The notes under the pieces: generated by a model | What the model saw: only the letters and a program-made list of their open reading frames with translations | Database searches by the model: none | What the model was told of the DNA's origin: nothing | Part shown: positions 1,062 to 7,510 of the stretch, piece by piece | Layout of the letters: each line of letters opens with the position of its first letter | How positions within the stretch are numbered: the first letter of the stretch is position 1 | Position numbers and translations under genes: made by a program | DNA from: Dimorphilus gyrociliatus | Lineage: Eukaryota; Animalia; Annelida | Reading direction: 5' to 3' | NCBI GenBank assembly: GCA_904063045.1 | Contig: CAJFCJ010000007.1 | Span: 1,867,404 to 1,931,403 of the forward strand | DNA: 64,000 bases

Positions 1062-2666
1062 ATGGTAAGTAGACAGCTAAAAATCTTAATAGAATACTGC
1101 AAAATAGTCATTTGACAGGTTCTTCTAGCATCGGCTGTTTGCAACAAATCTGGTAAAGCCGTTGTTTCACGGCAATTTGTCGAGATGACTCGATCAAGAA
1201 TAGAAGGGCTTCTAGCAGCGTTTCCAAAATTAATGAACACTGGTTCTCAACATACATTTGTGGAAACAGAAAGTGTTCGATATGTTTATCAACCTTTAGA
1301 AAAGTTATATGTGCTGTTGATAACCACAAAAGCTTCTAATATTCTTGAGGATCTAGAAACCCTCCGTCTTTTTGCAAGAGTTGTTCCAGAATATTGCAGG
1401 GCCTTGGACGAAAAAGAAGTAATACGACAAGCTTTTCAATTAATTTTTGCTTTTGACGAGATCGTCGCTCTAGGATATAGAGAGTCAGTGAATTTAGCCC
1501 AAATCCGCACTTATACTGAGATGGATTCTCATGAAGAGAGAGTCTTCAAGGCTGTCAGAGAAACTCAAGAAAAAGAAGCAAAAGAAAATATGAAAAGAAA
1601 AGCAAAAGAGTTACAGCAACTCAGAAAGGATCAATCTAATAGATCAAGACAGACTGGCAGCTATGCTCGATTTTCACCTCACTCATCTGACTCTGCAGTG
1701 ATAGAGCCGGAACCCATTAAACCAAGTTATAATAAACCAACTCCTTCCAGTGAATCTTCAAGTAAGGGAATGGTAATTAGGAAACCTAAGAACGATGATA
1801 TTTTTGTCAATAAAATAAAATCAGAAGGGCAAGAAGTCGTTGCTCCTGCTACTAAATCCGCTCATAAGGCACCAGTTTCATCTATCAATGAGGAAGGAAT
1901 TCATTTGAGGAGCGAAGAAAAGATGAACGTTACTATAAATAGACATGGTGGTATACAAAATCTAGAAATACAAGGATTACTACAATTAAAAGTTAATGAT
2001 GAAAAATCGGCGAAGTGCAAAATCAGAATGAGCACCAAACGATCAACTGACGTTCAATTACAAACTCATCCAAATGTTGACAAGAAACTATTTCAGAACG
2101 AAAGCTTGATTGCTTTGAAAAATCCCGATAAACCCTTTCCATTGCAGCAAGATATAGGTGTTTTAAAGTGGAGATTACCATCAAGTGATAAATCATATCT
2201 TCCCTTATCTATTGTGGTGTGGCCAGAAGACAACGGCAATGGTGGATGTGATGTCTCAGTTCAGTATGAGTTAGAAAGAACTGATCTTGAATTACGAGAA
2301 ATTACCATTAGCTTACCATGCCCCTCAAATCCTACTGTTGAAGAATGTGGCGAAGGGCTGGCAACATATAACCGTAGTGGGCGGCTTGAATGGAACATTC
2401 CCGTTATTAACCGCTCTAATCCGAACGCTGATTTACAATATACTTTACCATCTTCGGCTTCTCCAGATAGTATGTTTCCTGTTGATGTTTCATTCTCATC
2501 TGAACAAAATTTCTGTCAAATAACGGTAATTTCTAAATTTTACGCTAATGAAGTGGTAACAATGATCATTTTTCAGGTAGAGGAAGTCGAATCAGTCGAA
2601 AATAGGGAAAAGTTGCAATTCTCAACACAAACCATATTTTTTACTGAGAGTTATAAAATTATATAA
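1062..2666 (+). CDS. ARCN1: Coatomer subunit delta (archain); exon 1 is the ATG alone, introns 1065-1118 and 2526-2576
   Basis: M|VLLASAVCNKSGKAVVSRQFVEMTRSRIEGLLAAFPKLM longin N-terminus; QTHPNVDKKLF and GVLKWR in the mu-homology domain. Confidence 0.97.
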
Positions 2667-2823
2667 TAGCTTATTGGTACAATTATTAATAAACGATGTA
2701 GATTTTATTATCGTCAATAGATGGCGTAAAACGTCCTATTTTAAACACTAAGTGGCGCTCTATCGTAGCCGGATATCCGCTTTACGCAGACATTTTTAGA
2801 TCAACTTGTCTAAGTTATTTAAT

Positions 2824-5231
2824 ATGCATCTAATTTGGTTATTTATCTTTCTGTTAGAATTTAGGTTTATAAAACAACAAGGCATAGGATCAGGTTAACT
2901 TATTTATGATCTTCAACCGAAGAGACCTAATATTATAATATTTTTTCAGATTTTATTTCCGATGCTTGTAGCTCTCTTCCAGAGAAGGGTACTTGCTCTG
3001 ATTGCATTCAAATTAATCAAAATTGTGCTTGGTGTAAGGAGTTTTATAACCCCAATGTAGAAAATACACAATGTGATTCTTTCGAAAAACTACAAAAAAC
3101 TTGTAAATCAATCGAATATCCTGGAAGTAAACTTGAAGAAAATACTCTTGAATTGAGAGTGAACCAGGAATTAAAATTTACTATTCCGTACAAACAACCG
3201 GAAAATTATCCAGTTGATTTGTATATGCTGGTAGATGCCGCCAATGGAATGAGAGACTTCAGCAAACAGGTCAAAGACTTATCACCTAAAATTGTACAGA
3301 GTTTAGAAAAGTTAACGGCAGGCGATTTTAAAATTGGGTTTGGTACATTTAGTGATAAATCTTTAGTACCAACAGTGCGCATGAATAGGGATTTGTAAGT
3401 TTTTAATATTTTTAGAAAATGTAGATATATTTTCTGCTTTTACAGCACAGTATTGACAAGAGAAAATTTTGAGGAACCACCTCATATTTTCCATAACATC
3501 GTACCGTTGACAAAGAATGTTGATCTTTTCCAAGAATCTATCGCTAATGTTACAATAACGAATCAACTAGACTTCCCTAATTGTGGATTTTCTGCTGCCA
3601 TGCAAGCTTTACTATGTGAAGACGAAATTAAATGGAGAAAGGGCGCTAGAAAAATTTTACTAATTGCAACCAATCATTTTTCACATCTCGAAGGCGATGG
3701 ACACTTATTGGGATTATACAATAGATATGAAGATCATTGTCTTATGAAGAATACACAAAAATTGATCTATGATCATCAAGATTATCCCTCAATAGAGCAA
3801 ATTCGAACAAAAACTTTGGAAAAAGAAGTTACAATATTATTTGTTGTTCGTAATTTTAAAGATCCTCAACACTATGATCAAGATGCTGGTGTTAGTCTTG
3901 CCATGGATACAATTATTAAGGAATATAATAACTTTGCAAAAAAAATAGGTGGAAGTACCAAAACAGCAAAATTATTGGATGACTCGAGTAACGTTGTGGA
4001 AATTATTAAGAAGTATTACAAGGAAATTAGCGGAGAAGTGGAGATCTCTTGGAAAGATCAACATAATTCAGGAAATTTGGAAGTTAAACTTGAAGCAGAA
4101 TGCGAACCCGGGAAAGTTACCAATAAACATATTTGTAGAAAAGTTCAAGCAGGAACAACAGTGAAGTTCCACATTAGCGTTAAACTAAAAAGTTGTAATG
4201 AAACTAATGAGAGAAGTATGAAACTAGCCATTGGGGTTCAAAATAAAGAATTTGATCTTAAAGAAGTATGTGATTGTAATTGCGAAAACGAAAGCAAACA
4301 AGGAGCGAATATTTGTAGCGGTAAAGGAACACAAATATGCGGTAAGTGTACTTGTAATGATGGATTCACGGGTGAAAATTGCCAATGCGACAAAAAGTCA
4401 CAAGATCATGATGCGACCAAATGTGACGATAGTACTTGTAATTATAGAGGGAAATGTCAGTGCGATGGAACTTGTCGATGCTTTGAAGGATATCATGGGC
4501 CTGATTGCAGCTGCAAAGATAATGAAGGATGCAAATTTTACAATAATGAAGTTTGTGGTGGAAAGTCGCGCGGTTATTGTTTTTGCAAAAATTGTACATG
4601 TCTTGACGAATACGAAGGAGATAATTGTGGCTGTCTTAAGAGTAACAATACCTGTAAAACTGAAAACAATCTCATTTGTAATGATAAAGGCGTTTGCGAA
4701 TGTGGGAAATGTATATGTGAAAAGGATTACTTTGGGCCAACTTGTGAGATATGTTTAACGTGTGAAAAGCACTGTGATGATTCCTTTGACTGTGCTGTTT
4801 GTAAAGCCTTTAGTAATTATACTAAATTTACTCCTGATGAATGTAAAAGGAATTGTGAACATGTAACTGTCGTTGACCATAAAGTAGGAGGACAGGAGTA
4901 TTTTACTCAGTTGTGTGTGCGGTCACTGCCTAACAAGTGTCGCATATTTTACTCTTATCATTATTCTACAGGAAAATTGAAAGTTTGGAACAAAACAAAA
5001 TGTATTGAAAGTAGCAGGAAAACAACATTCATTGTCATAGGTGTGATAGTTGGTATTGTTCTTGTAGGAATATTTATTATTTTAGCTTGGAGAATTGCTG
5101 TAACTATTAAAGACCGTAGGGAATTTAGCCAATTTGAAAAAAATATGGACTCAGCTCAATACGAGACAGCTGATAATCCACTGTACAAACCAGCGATAAA
5201 AACGTTTGAAAACCCTATGTATAACTCTTAA
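2824..5231 (+). CDS. Integrin beta subunit with degenerate MIDAS; introns 2894-2949 and 3395-3445
   Basis: Signal-peptide-like exon, PSI domain (CSDCIQINQNCAWC), beta-I domain (YPVDLYMLVD, GFGTFSDK), Cys-rich EGF repeats (CSGKGTQICGKCTC), TM helix and two cytoplasmic NPxY motifs (NPLY, NPMY). Confidence 0.93.
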
Positions 5232-5296
5232 TTTGTTATAATTTTATAGATTTAATTTCTTGCTTTTTACTTTTAGATCTTAAAACTAGTCTCTTT

Positions 5297-5329
5297 TATA
5301 TATATATATATATATATATACATATATAT
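5297..5329. repeat. (TA)n microsatellite
   Basis: Direct reading of a TA run downstream of the integrin stop codon. Confidence 0.9.
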
Positions 5330-5774
5330 GCATTAGAATATATGCTGCTTTATTGGTGCTAATAATACATTAAATTTATACTTTGTTAAGAATATCTGTC
5401 TCTGAATCAATATTTAGACAACTACTGATTAAAACACTTAGAGAATTGATATAATTTTACACTAACCAGAGGGACTAAATTTTGTATGATTTTTTCCTTT
5501 ATCTGGAATCAATATCAATTGTCTAAACATAGGTTCTAAAAAGATAGCTATTTGAAAATATTATTTAGCGCCTAAAAACGTGGAATCGAATCGATCCGAT
5601 GTCGATTCTAAGCTGGTAGCTGATTGGTTAACGTCATCTACACTGAACACTCTCCGACGACGCCATATTTTCGTTTGTTGCCGGGTGGCGAAAAGTGATA
5701 AAATTGTAGTTAAGTAGGCGTTATTTCGCAAAATTCCTGATTATTAGGTTAAAGTCAAAGATCAAGGATAGAAA

Positions 5775-7510
5775 ATGCAGAACGGAGATATAGACGAAGA
5801 GTTAGCTTGTTCCGAAAAAGAAGTCGAAAGGAATCAGGACAGGTAGTCACATGGCTTACACGTTCACTGGTGTTTGTTTGTTCGCTTTATGATAAGTCTA
5901 AACAAACGATTTCATTTATAATTAAACTATCTTATTCGCGAATTAATAAAATAATGAAATTTTTTACAAATAATTGTCTTTTATCGATGACAGGAAGAGC
6001 AGTAAAGTGACTATAAAACACCTACCCCCAGAAACAACGAAGGAAAAAATAGAAGAGCTAATAGATTCTTTTGGTAAAATTAGTCGCTGTGATATTATTA
6101 CTCCAAATCCTGAACAAAAAGTTGCTTACATCACATTTGAATCTTCTGACGAAGCTATTCAGTGAGTTGTTTTACCAAACTAAACAAAATTATAAAAATG
6201 TGATAATTAATTTTTAATTCATGTTTATTCAATATTCTAGGGCCCTGGAAAATCTTAATAATAAAGAATACGAAGGAAGAAATTTAAGTGTCGAATTAGT
6301 GACCGGCTCTAAATCAAAACGTGGGCAGCATGCGGGAAGATTTGGAGGACGAGGAACAGGATATCCGCTCAGGATTTTGGTACCAAGTGATTTTGTAGGT
6401 GCTATTATCGGTCGTAAAGGTCAAACGATTAAAAATATTACAACGCAAAGTCGGGCTAGAGTCGACGTTCATTGCAAAGAAAACACTGGCTTACTTGAAA
6501 AAGTCATCTCAATATATGGCCAGCCGGACAATTGTTCGAATGCCTGCAAAGAAATATTGCGCGTTATGCAACAGGAAAGTGAAAATGCAAACAGAGGAGA
6601 AGTAGCTTTGAAAATGCTTGCGGAAGATCGTCACTGTGGTCGAATTATTGGAAAAAAAGGAACAGTTATTAAACAGATTCGAAGTGAAACTGATACAAAA
6701 ATATACGTAAGCAATTTGCAAGATGTACCGGCGGTGTTCCCGGATAGAGTGATAACAATAAATGGAGAATTGGAAAGGATGCAGAAAGCTGAAAATATAA
6801 TATCTAGTAAACTCAGAGAGTGCTATGATAAAGAATCGGTGTCACCTGGTGTTCATGCTCCGTATATACCTCCACCTCCATCTGGTCTTATGACACCATA
6901 TCGTATGCCTTTTATGCCTCCTCCCACTTACATGCAACAACAGCCAGTTCCTTTTCAACTCCCTCCGCTACCTTTCGGCGACTCTTGTCAAGTCCATGTA
7001 CCCCATACATCAGTAGGAGCAATAATAGGAGCTGGTGGCTCAAGCATCAAGCAGATCATTCGTCAATCAGGAGCCTTTGTTGCTGTTGAGCAAAAGGCAG
7101 ATGAAAATACTACAAATGAAAGAATTGTAACAATAAAAGGTTTGATGGATGCTCAGTGTAGGGCATTATATCAACTTTATGAAAGAGTAAATAGTGATGT
7201 GTATGCCAGTTTCGAAACTTGTCGTCTGCGCATTACCATTAGAGTTCCGAGAAGTATGGTAGGAAGAGTGATTGGAAAAAATGGGAAAAACGTTCGTGAT
7301 GTTCAACGAATGACAGGAGCCATAATCAAATTACCTGACGAAACATCTGGAGGTGAAGATACCCCCGTTGATGTGTTTGGTAACTTTATGTCCGTACAGG
7401 TTTGTATACAGTTTATATTCATGTTAAAATCCTAATTGCAAAAACCATAACAGCAAGCTATGTATCAAGTTCGAACTCTAATCGCTACAGCACCTGGAAG
7501 GCAAGATTAG
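5775..7510 (+). CDS. IGF2BP: IGF2 mRNA-binding protein (IMP/ZBP family): 1 RRM plus 4 KH domains, 4 exons
   Basis: RRM (KVTIKHLP...VAYITF); KH1 PLRILVPSDFVGAIIGRKGQTIKNIT; further GxxG loops GKKG, GAGG and GKNG. Last exon QAMYQVRTLIATAPGRQD*. Confidence 0.92.

What the first reader, a model, noticed from the sequence alone, without database searches (positions are those of the whole stretch)
3234..3700. Integrin beta with a dismantled metal-ion ligand-binding site but intact signalling tail
Seen: the MIDAS DxSxS reads D-A-A-N-G (3234-3248). The ADMIDAS DD reads RD. The NxDxPEGG motif reads QLDFPNCG, so the MIDAS Glu is lost. The STD motif reads ATN. Both NPxY motifs are kept. Known: these residues coordinate Mg2+/Ca2+ and the acidic residue of RGD-type ligands. 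Inference: a pseudo-integrin acting as a decoy, scaffold or cation-independent receptor. Four coordinated changes in an open ORF argue against sequencing error.
Basis: partly seen in the sequence, partly recalled or inferred. Interest (0 to 1): 0.7.

Follow-up and report, generated by a model that had tools for sequence, protein, structure and literature searches.

The report
Integrin beta without its metal site
A small marine worm makes, and has kept under strong selection, a complete integrin beta adhesion receptor in which four of the five residues that normally hold the ligand-binding magnesium ion are replaced, so it probably binds its partner another way.

Summary
Window 2824-5231 (+) is a three-exon, 766-codon integrin beta gene.

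**Metal sites**, aligned to human beta-3/beta-1:
- MIDAS: DLSYS reads DAANG (S121A, S123G), with E220N and D251N as well.
- SyMBS: N215 is Q.
- D119, D126, D158, D217 and P219 remain.
- The specificity-loop Cys pair is gone, and an 18-residue insertion follows strand beta-5.
- The membrane-proximal KDRREF, NPLY and NPMY are intact.

**Not an error or pseudogene:**
- Spliced contigs from two independent studies remove both introns.
- A related worm (L001, same gene order) carries identical motifs.
- Synonymous sites between the two are saturated, yet dN is 0.17-0.19. The beta-I domain is the best-kept part (92% identity, dN 0.056).

**Rarity:** an exhaustive search found no other relative above 37% identity. 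None of 143 representative beta chains has a genuine loss of three or more MIDAS residues.

**Reading:** a selectively maintained beta subunit that keeps the talin/kindlin-binding tail motifs but cannot use the canonical MIDAS-carboxylate bond. This is a new variant of a known kind.

**Untested:**
- Its ligand.
- Its alpha partner.
- Whether the genome also has a canonical beta.

The scan did not report this on other DNA.

The parts
2824..2893 (+). Exon 1: ATG plus a hydrophobic N-terminus (a signal-peptide candidate judged by eye, no predictor run), 23 codons plus 1 nt
   Evidence: Translation. The joint 2889(+4) to 2946(+4), GT..AG, skipping 56 nt, is present in the X2 contig. The same phase-1 donor, TCAG|GTTAA, is present in L001.
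2894..2949 (+). Intron 1 (56 nt, GT..AG)
   Evidence: joints table; splice sites.
2950..3394 (+). Exon 2: PSI domain, shortened N-terminal arm of the hybrid domain, and the first part of beta-I (strand beta-1, MIDAS loop, helix alpha-1, strand beta-2)
   Evidence: Pfam PSI_integrin and Integrin_beta. PDB alignments. Alignment A1 shows about 25 residues fewer than other betas between PSI and beta-I.
3234..3260 (+). MIDAS/ADMIDAS loop D-A-A-N-G-M-R-D-F, where canonical betas have D-L-S-x-S-M-K-D-D: S121A, S123G, D127F
   Evidence: Identical in L001. The X1 variant at 3239 is synonymous.
3354..3356 (+). Retained Asp equivalent to beta-3 D158 (SyMBS ligand) in FGTFSDK
3395..3445 (+). Intron 2 (51 nt, GT..AG, phase 2)
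   Evidence: The joint 3394 to 3446 is present in both the X1 (RNA) and X2 contigs.
3446..5231 (+). Exon 3: rest of beta-I, C-terminal hybrid part, four I-EGF repeats, beta-tail region, transmembrane helix, cytoplasmic tail, stop TAA at 5229-5231
   Evidence: Pfam. E=1e-70 to full-length human beta-3 over residues 15-592.
3360..3503 (+). Specificity-determining-loop region (interrupted by intron 2), without the disulphide Cys pair found in all 16 compared betas
   Evidence: Alignments A1 and A2.
3564..3587 (+). Q-L-D-F-P-N-C-G in place of N-x-D-x-P-E-G-G: N215Q, E220N (the MIDAS/SyMBS Glu is lost), D217 and P219 kept
   Evidence: Identical in L001.
3666..3674 (+). A-T-N in place of [ST]-T-D: D251N
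   Evidence: Identical in L001.
3852..3905 (+). Lineage-specific 18-residue insertion (NFKDPQHYDQDAGVSLAM) between strand beta-5 and the following helix
   Evidence: It appears as an 18-residue gap in human beta-3. It is absent from or much shorter in the 16 other betas. It differs at 1 of 18 residues in L001. In the truncated AF2 model it forms a loop plus an N-terminal extension of the helix: strand 128-135, helix 146-167, with low pLDDT at 141-150.
4269..4856 (+). Cys-rich stalk (I-EGF1-4)
   Evidence: Pfam I-EGF_1, EGF_2 and EGF_integrin hits, several below cut-off. Aligned to the beta-3 EGF repeats. Exon 3 holds 48 Cys.
5028..5090 (+). Transmembrane helix (FIVIGVIVGIVLVGIFIILAW)
   Evidence: Translation; aligned to the beta-3 transmembrane helix.
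5091..5228 (+). Cytoplasmic tail: membrane-proximal KDRREF (5109-5126), NPLY (5175-5186), NPMY (5211-5222)
   Evidence: Pfam Integrin_b_cyt, E=8e-16, full length. Alignment to the beta-3 tail.
2714..2797 (+). Conserved non-coding blocks in the 157-nt spacer before the start codon: AGATGGC 2719-2725, AGTGGCGCTCT 2751-2761, CCGGATATCCG 2769-2779, CAGACATTTT 2787-2796. Candidate promoter elements.
   Evidence: Alignment of the window against the L001 upstream region, although synonymous sites are saturated between the two. Function not tested.

Best explanation
This is a real, expressed integrin beta-subunit gene (three exons, 766 codons).

Before this species and a related one split, the gene went through a burst of change that removed the canonical ligand-coordinating metal site. 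The protein has been held almost constant since.

**Shown:**
- All domains of a beta chain are present.
- Four of the five MIDAS side chains are replaced (S121A, S123G, E220N, D251N).
- ADMIDAS D127 is F and SyMBS N215 is Q.
- The specificity-loop disulphide is absent.
- An 18-residue insertion sits after strand beta-5.
- The tail keeps the membrane-proximal Asp and both NPxY motifs.
- The beta-I domain is under the strongest purifying selection of the whole protein.

**Inferred:**
- The protein still pairs with an alpha subunit, reaches the cell surface and couples to talin and kindlin through its tail.
- It cannot clamp a ligand carboxylate (RGD Asp, laminin gamma-tail Glu) onto a MIDAS Mg2+.
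- Whatever its beta-I top face binds is held by a remodelled surface that does not use the metal-carboxylate bond. That surface includes the changed loops and the insertion. The partner may be an extracellular ligand, with or without the alpha chain.
- It is therefore an active but non-canonical receptor rather than a dead decoy.
For: **Family and architecture:**
- Pfam Integrin_beta, PSI and Integrin_b_cyt.
- E=1e-70 to full-length human beta-3.

**Residue mapping:**

**Expression and splicing:**
- A 2,700-nt contig of run X2 lacks both introns.
- An RNA contig of an unrelated study (X1) lacks intron 2.
- X1 carries 8 synonymous differences and 1 non-synonymous.

**Orthologue:** L001 has the same neighbouring gene, the same intron phases and identical metal-site motifs.

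**Selection:**
- pS is 0.76 (saturated) against dN 0.17-0.19.
- Beta-I is 92% identical (dN 0.056), against PSI 60% and EGF 62%.
- A canonical annelid pair at the same overall identity shows beta-I 84% and EGF 77%.

**Burst then stasis:** the stem branch is 3.1-3.4 substitutions per site, against tips of 0.09-0.25.

**Established knowledge (my own, not read here):** single substitutions of D119, S121, S123, E220 or D251 in human beta-3, and the equivalents in beta-1 and beta-2, abolish ligand binding while allowing heterodimer expression in most cases. The ligand-carboxylate-on-MIDAS mechanism is restated in PMC11260871.
Against: - No binding, metal or localisation data exist.
- Beta-I is the best conserved domain in ordinary betas too. 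Its conservation could reflect alpha-subunit pairing alone.
- Asn and Gln replacements still offer oxygen ligands, so some metal binding, especially at SyMBS, is not excluded.
- The complete beta-I domain could not be modelled, because it spans an intron and the joined step was left out.
- The truncated model has only moderate confidence (mean pLDDT 69).
- No alpha partner or ligand is identified.
Confidence: 0.55

Rival explanations
1. Non-ligand-binding regulatory subunit. The protein pairs with alpha chains and/or binds talin and kindlin through its intact tail, but binds nothing extracellular. It would tune adhesion by competing with a canonical beta chain for partners.
For: - The tail motifs are intact and the MIDAS is dismantled.
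- Engineered MIDAS mutants of human betas behave as ligand-dead but still assemble (my own knowledge).
- Beta-I conservation could be explained by the alpha-propeller interface alone.
Against: - The remodelled top-face loops are nearly invariant between two species whose synonymous sites are saturated. These loops are the MIDAS loop, the specificity-loop region, QLDFPNCG and the 18-residue insertion. They face the ligand, and only partly the alpha chain.
- Beta-I is more constrained, relative to the stalk, than in a canonical pair.
- A decoy needs a canonical beta to compete with, and none could be shown here.
Confidence: 0.25
2. Still a cation-dependent integrin. The site is rebuilt with other ligands (D119, N220, N251, backbone carbonyls, water, and an intact-enough SyMBS made of D158, Q215, D217, P219 and N220). 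Ligand binding remains metal-dependent but with altered ion preference or affinity.
For: - D119, D126, D158, D217 and P219 are retained, and N and Q side chains carry oxygen ligands.
- Natural betas tolerate loss of ADMIDAS residues and of D251, for example mollusc paralogues with N or G at 251.
Against: - Both directly coordinating Ser hydroxyls and the directly coordinating Glu are gone.
- In the survey, no other genuine beta lacks more than two MIDAS residues.
- Single Ser-to-Ala changes suffice to kill ligand binding in human betas (my own knowledge).
Confidence: 0.13
3. Artefact or dying gene: an assembly or sequencing error, or a recently inactivated pseudogene that merely remains open.
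For: None beyond the unusual residues.
Against: - The same sequence appears in two independent spliced transcript contigs.
- The motifs are identical in a second species.
- dN is far below the saturated dS, and within-species differences run 8 synonymous to 1 non-synonymous.
- The ORF is intact with 55 Cys.
Confidence: 0.02

Closest known systems
Human integrin beta-3 / beta-1 (solved structures such as 8t2u_B, 7nwl_B, 4wjk_B)
   Same: The domain order is the same: PSI, hybrid, beta-I, four I-EGF, beta-tail, transmembrane helix, and a tail with HDR(K/R)EF-type Asp, NPLY and NPxY. E=1e-70 over nearly the whole of exon 3.
   Different: - S121A, S123G, D127F, N215Q, E220N and D251N.
- No specificity-loop disulphide.
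- 18-residue insertion after strand beta-5.
- Hybrid N-arm about 25 residues shorter.
- About 33-35% identity.
Canonical annelid beta-PS-type integrins (P0029 and its kin from Ridgeia, Paralvinella, Helobdella, Owenia, Capitella)
   Same: These are the best-scoring relatives after the orthologue (37% identity). A clade with them is not rejected: AU p=0.59, and the constrained tree is slightly better than the free one.
   Different: They all have D-x-S-x-S, DD, NxDxPEGG and [ST]D intact. The window's protein sits on a stem of more than 3 substitutions per site.
Mollusc beta paralogues with a partly relaxed site (Bulinus P0030, Haliotis P0032, Argonauta P0034, Batillaria P0042/P0188) and sea-spider Nymphon P0053
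   Same: They are natural beta chains that have lost D251 (N or G). In Nymphon, S123 is also lost. ADMIDAS residues are lost as well, and the tails are intact.
   Different: They keep both Ser/Thr (Nymphon keeps one) and the Glu. None has lost more than two MIDAS residues. They are not specifically related to the window's protein in the trees.
Vertebrate integrin beta-8 and insect beta-nu-type chains
   Same: These are examples of beta chains with a naturally altered ADMIDAS. Many representatives in the survey read KY, QH or TH in place of DD. The beta-8 and beta-nu names rest on my own knowledge.
   Different: Their MIDAS is intact and they remain metal-dependent ligand binders. Beta-8 also has a divergent tail, whereas here the tail is canonical and the MIDAS is lost.
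Engineered or disease MIDAS mutants (beta-3 D119Y 'Cam' variant, beta-3 S121A/S123A, beta-1 D130A)
   Same: The same positions are changed.
   Different: Those are single, deleterious changes. Here six changes are fixed together and kept by selection in a wild gene.

Membership tests
Integrin beta chain (family by descent and architecture) | Beta-I (VWA-type) domain, Pfam PF00362 | tested here: met
   E=1.4e-15 for the exon 2 part and 1.7e-36 for the exon 3 part. Together they cover profile positions 2-62 and 78-247.
Integrin beta chain (family by descent and architecture) | N-terminal PSI domain with its Cys pattern | tested here: met
   PF17205, 28.9 bits against a cut-off of 27. C6, C15, C18, C25, C28, C41 and C51 are invariant in alignment A1.
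Integrin beta chain (family by descent and architecture) | Hybrid domain split around beta-I | tested here: inconclusive
   The C-terminal part aligns with beta-3 and folds as strands in the truncated model. The N-terminal arm is about 25 residues shorter than in 16 other betas.
Integrin beta chain (family by descent and architecture) | Four Cys-rich I-EGF repeats and a beta-tail domain | tested here: met
   It aligns to beta-3 through residue 676 and beyond, and exon 3 holds 48 Cys. Most Pfam EGF hits fall under their cut-offs, and Integrin_B_tail was not hit.
Integrin beta chain (family by descent and architecture) | Single transmembrane helix and a cytoplasmic domain with a membrane-proximal Asp and two NPxY motifs | tested here: met
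   PF08725, E=8e-16, profile positions 1-44 of 44. KDRREF, NPLY and NPMY are present.
Integrin beta chain (family by descent and architecture) | Non-covalent heterodimer with an integrin alpha chain | not testable with these tools
Canonical metal-ion-dependent integrin beta (functional class) | MIDAS: D119-x-S121-x-S123, E220, D251 | tested here: not met
   It reads D-A-A-N-G, N and N, so only D119 is kept. It is therefore not filed in this functional class.
Canonical metal-ion-dependent integrin beta (functional class) | ADMIDAS: D126, D127 (plus backbone carbonyls) | tested here: not met
   It reads D-F. Loss of this pair is common among natural betas.
Canonical metal-ion-dependent integrin beta (functional class) | SyMBS/LIMBS: D158, N215, D217, P219, E220 | tested here: inconclusive
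   It reads D, Q, D, P, N. Three residues are kept and two are replaced by residues that still carry oxygen ligands. Metal occupancy cannot be judged from sequence.
Canonical metal-ion-dependent integrin beta (functional class) | Disulphide-bonded specificity-determining loop | tested here: not met
   The Cys pair is present in all 16 compared betas and absent here and in L001.

The most novel reading that the evidence does not exclude
This chain is the beta subunit of the worm's laminin receptor, or even its only beta chain, and both halves of the universal metal-carboxylate bond were given up together. Unchecked first-reader notes on the same genome report a laminin gamma tail without the integrin-binding Glu (s1-084175) and a laminin alpha that ends after LG3 (s1-084747). 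If both hold, this animal would run basement-membrane adhesion through a metal-independent integrin-ligand interface that co-evolved on both sides.
Probability: 0.1. Interest if true: 0.9.

Novelty: new variant of a known kind. Interest (0 to 1): 0.6.

Why it matters
The MIDAS of the beta-I domain is treated as the invariant core of integrin function. The ligand's carboxylate completes the metal's coordination, and that event drives the conformational signal across the membrane (PMC11260871). Papers on ascidian and cnidarian integrins report it as fully conserved.

Here a natural beta chain has lost it, has kept everything else, and has been under strong selection since. That makes it a ready-made test of three questions:
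- Can an integrin bind and signal without the metal-carboxylate bond?
- What does the beta-I domain do besides hold the metal?
- How does an essential receptor site get remodelled?

It also gives a defined case for asking whether receptor and matrix ligands changed together in a miniaturised animal.

Tried and rejected
1. **Canonical beta paralogue in this genome.**
   - Logan-derived hits P0012, P0014 and P0015, and the best canonical hits P0029 and P0189, were traced to their contigs. All come from other samples.
   - P0029 (GC3 0.56), P0189 (0.41) and P0012 (0.69) do not fit this genome, whose GC3 is 0.26-0.29. P0014 and P0015 do fit on GC3 (0.27, 0.31), but they group with the insect and mite betas in the tree.
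   - No named Dimorphilus protein appeared in either word search.
   - The question stays open.
2. **Genome paper.** The supplements that are held do not mention integrins. Five literature searches found no description of a beta chain without a MIDAS.
3. **Krill protein P0118.** It looked like a second case of a dismantled MIDAS. It is a chimeric gene model: a DDE transposase fused to the C-terminal half of a beta-I domain. Rejected.
4. **Placement in the tree.** It is unresolved because of the very long stem. An AU test does not reject a clade with canonical annelid betas. I therefore cannot say whether it is a derived orthologue or a lineage-specific duplicate.
5. **Structure.** Only the exon 3 part could be folded (mean pLDDT 69). 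It locates the insertion as a loop plus a helix extension, but it cannot show the MIDAS loop, which lies in exon 2. No fold search was run because the sequence evidence is already decisive.
Full report
**What is there**

The finding lies in a compact, AT-rich (35% GC) animal genome. An earlier follow-up note of this scan names it as the annelid Dimorphilus gyrociliatus. I did not verify that independently. It fits the 51-56 nt introns and the fact that the best canonical relatives are annelid.

The gene model follows from reading the sequence and its splice sites:

| Part | Coordinates | Note |
|---|---|---|
| Exon 1 | 2824-2893 | ATG and hydrophobic N-terminus (a signal-peptide candidate judged by eye) |
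| Intron 1 | 2894-2949 | 56 nt |
| Exon 2 | 2950-3394 | |
| Intron 2 | 3395-3445 | 51 nt |
| Exon 3 | 3446-5231 | stop at 5229-5231 |

The total is 766 codons. Both introns are confirmed by public data:
- A 2,700-nt contig of run X2 covers 2700-5285 and skips exactly these two GT..AG intervals.
- An RNA contig from an unrelated study (X1, a coral metatranscriptome) skips intron 2.

**The observation**

Pfam finds PSI_integrin, Integrin_beta (the two exon parts cover the profile from position 2 to 247) and the full Integrin_b_cyt domain. Exon 3 matches full-length human beta-3 at E=1e-70, from the beta-I domain to the last NPxY. Residue-by-residue alignments give the table below.

| Site | Canonical (beta-3) | Here | Window coordinates |
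|---|---|---|---|
| MIDAS/ADMIDAS loop | D-L-S-Y-S-M-K-D-D | D-A-A-N-G-M-R-D-F | 3234-3260 |
| SyMBS/MIDAS loop | N-R-D-A-P-E-G-G | Q-L-D-F-P-N-C-G | 3564-3587 |
| D251 position | T-T-D | A-T-N | 3666-3674 |
| D158 position | FGAFVDK | FGTFSDK (Asp kept) | 3354-3356 |

So MIDAS keeps only D119 and loses S121, S123, E220 and D251. ADMIDAS keeps D126 and loses D127. SyMBS keeps D158, D217 and P219 and has Q and N in place of N215 and E220.

NPLY (5175-5186), NPMY (5211-5222) and the membrane-proximal KDRREF (5109-5126) are present.

- The specificity-determining loop lacks its Cys pair, which is present in all 16 compared betas.
- An 18-residue insertion (3852-3905) follows strand beta-5.
- The N-terminal arm of the hybrid domain is about 25 residues shorter.

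**Is it real and maintained?**

The closest relative in 5.8 billion clustered proteins is P0001, at 77% identity. Its contig L001 comes from another sequencing sample. It carries the same upstream coatomer-delta gene, the same three-exon structure with the same intron phases, and identical DAANGMRDF, QLDFPNCG and ATN motifs. L001 ends in an Illumina adapter, so its C-terminus is missing.

Selection between the two species:
- Synonymous sites are saturated (pS 0.76) while dN is 0.17-0.19.
- By domain, beta-I is 92% identical (dN 0.056), PSI 60%, hybrid 58-70%, EGF 62% and beta-tail 80%.
- A control pair of canonical annelid betas at the same overall identity (76%) shows beta-I 84% and EGF 77%. 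The metal-less beta-I is therefore at least as constrained as a ligand-binding one.
- The X1 transcript differs from the window at nine places, eight of them synonymous. One is inside the DAANG codons.

Error, pseudogene and relaxed selection are excluded.

**How unusual is it?**

An exhaustive HMMER search of 1.84 billion representatives found 1,346 relatives. Nothing lies between 77% and 37% identity.

I aligned the best 150 together with the earlier hits and read the eleven metal-site columns. Among 143 complete rows:
- D-[ST]-[ST] and E220 are almost universal.
- The ADMIDAS pair is often lost.
- D251 is replaced in about seven. These are mollusc paralogues of Bulinus, Haliotis, Argonauta and Batillaria, and a Nymphon chain (names).
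- S123 is lost in two.
- The only other row with three or more MIDAS changes, krill P0118, is a chimeric gene model: a DDE transposase fused to half a beta-I domain.

In this sample the dinophilid protein is the only genuine beta chain with more than two MIDAS residues changed. Only the best 150 of 1,346 hits were surveyed.

Papers in the library describe the DxSxS motif as conserved in ascidian and cnidarian betas. I found none describing a natural loss.

**Origin**

In two maximum-likelihood trees the pair sits on a stem of 3.1-3.4 substitutions per site, with tips of 0.09-0.25, among spiralian betas. Placement is not supported. Holding it together with the canonical annelid beta clade gives a slightly better likelihood than the free tree (AU p=0.59).

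The pattern is a burst of change followed by stasis. Whether the gene is the derived orthologue of the annelid beta-PS-type chain or a lineage-specific duplicate cannot be told from these data.

**Mechanism**

Shown:
- The architecture and the replaced residues.
- The intact tail motifs.
- Expression and the selection pattern.

Inferred from established integrin biochemistry (my own knowledge, plus PMC11260871):
- Without the two Ser hydroxyls and the Glu, the MIDAS cannot hold Mg2+ in the canonical way.
- A ligand carboxylate therefore cannot complete the coordination sphere.
- The intact tail should still bind talin and kindlin.
- MIDAS mutants of human betas usually still pair with alpha chains.

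The remodelled loops and the insertion are nearly invariant between the two species. In the truncated model the insertion forms a loop plus an N-terminal extension of the helix after strand beta-5. By topology that is the metal-site face of the fold; this is my inference. I therefore favour a receptor that still uses its beta-I top face, but without the metal-carboxylate bond (confidence 0.55).

The rivals:

| Rival | Confidence |
|---|---|
| Ligand-dead regulatory or decoy subunit | 0.25 |
| Rebuilt, still cation-dependent site, since Asn/Gln and an almost intact SyMBS remain possible | 0.13 |
| Artefact or dying gene | 0.02 |

**Limits**

- I could not search the rest of this genome, so I do not know whether a canonical beta chain or which alpha chains exist. 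Attempts through Logan contigs failed.
The full-length protein was neither searched nor folded, and the MIDAS loop in exon 2 is absent from the model.
- Notes by other first readers report an altered laminin gamma tail and a truncated laminin alpha in the same genome. These are unchecked leads for a co-evolution reading.

**Verdict**

This is a new variant of a known kind, of real interest to integrin biology. The decisive tests are the integrin census, a full model and metal and binding assays.

Noticed in passing
window 2714-2797 and L001 1786-1870: The 157-nt spacer between the coatomer-delta stop and the integrin ATG holds blocks conserved between two species whose synonymous sites are saturated. 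The blocks are AGATGGC, AGTGGCGCTCT, a CCGGATATCCG(G) palindrome and CAGACATTTT. They are candidate core-promoter elements.
   Followed up: partly
window 1185-2666 (+): The upstream neighbour is a coatomer delta (ARCN1-type) gene, with Pfam Adap_comp_sub and Clat_adaptor_s. The spliced X2 contig that carries the integrin mRNA runs on for about 186 nt upstream of 2700, into this gene's 3' end. That may be overlapping UTRs or read-through. The same gene order is found in L001.
   Followed up: no
window 5974-7435 (+): The downstream neighbour encodes an IGF2BP-like RNA-binding protein with four KH domains (KH_1, E=1e-60). A short upstream ORF at 5974-6165 reads like its RNA-recognition-motif (RRM) part by eye; no domain scan was run on it.
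   Followed up: no
window 5295-5330: A (TA)n/(AT)n microsatellite lies just after the integrin stop codon. The read tool skipped 5286-5400 as a repeat.
   Followed up: no
L001 4094-4118: The Logan contig of the orthologue ends in an Illumina adapter (AGATCGGAAGAGC...). The stop codon of database protein P0001 is therefore an artefact, and its first seven residues come from the intron.
   Followed up: yes
P0118 (Meganyctiphanes norvegica, CAL4063328.1): This database protein looks like an integrin beta with a destroyed MIDAS. It is a chimeric model: a DDE_1 transposase domain at residues 73-136 is fused to the C-terminal half of a beta-I domain.
   Followed up: yes
P0030, P0032, P0034, P0042/P0188, P0053: Mollusc beta paralogues (Bulinus, Haliotis, Argonauta, Batillaria) have N or G at the D251 position. 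A tandem family in the sea spider Nymphon has D-L-T-A-N plus G251. Partial relaxation of beta-I metal sites recurs in invertebrate paralogues. Loss of the ADMIDAS Asp pair is frequent among the 143 surveyed chains.
   Followed up: partly
P0005 (Sarcoptes scabiei): A clear full-length integrin beta is named 'sodium-dependent multivitamin transporter-like' by its source. This is a mis-annotation.
   Followed up: no
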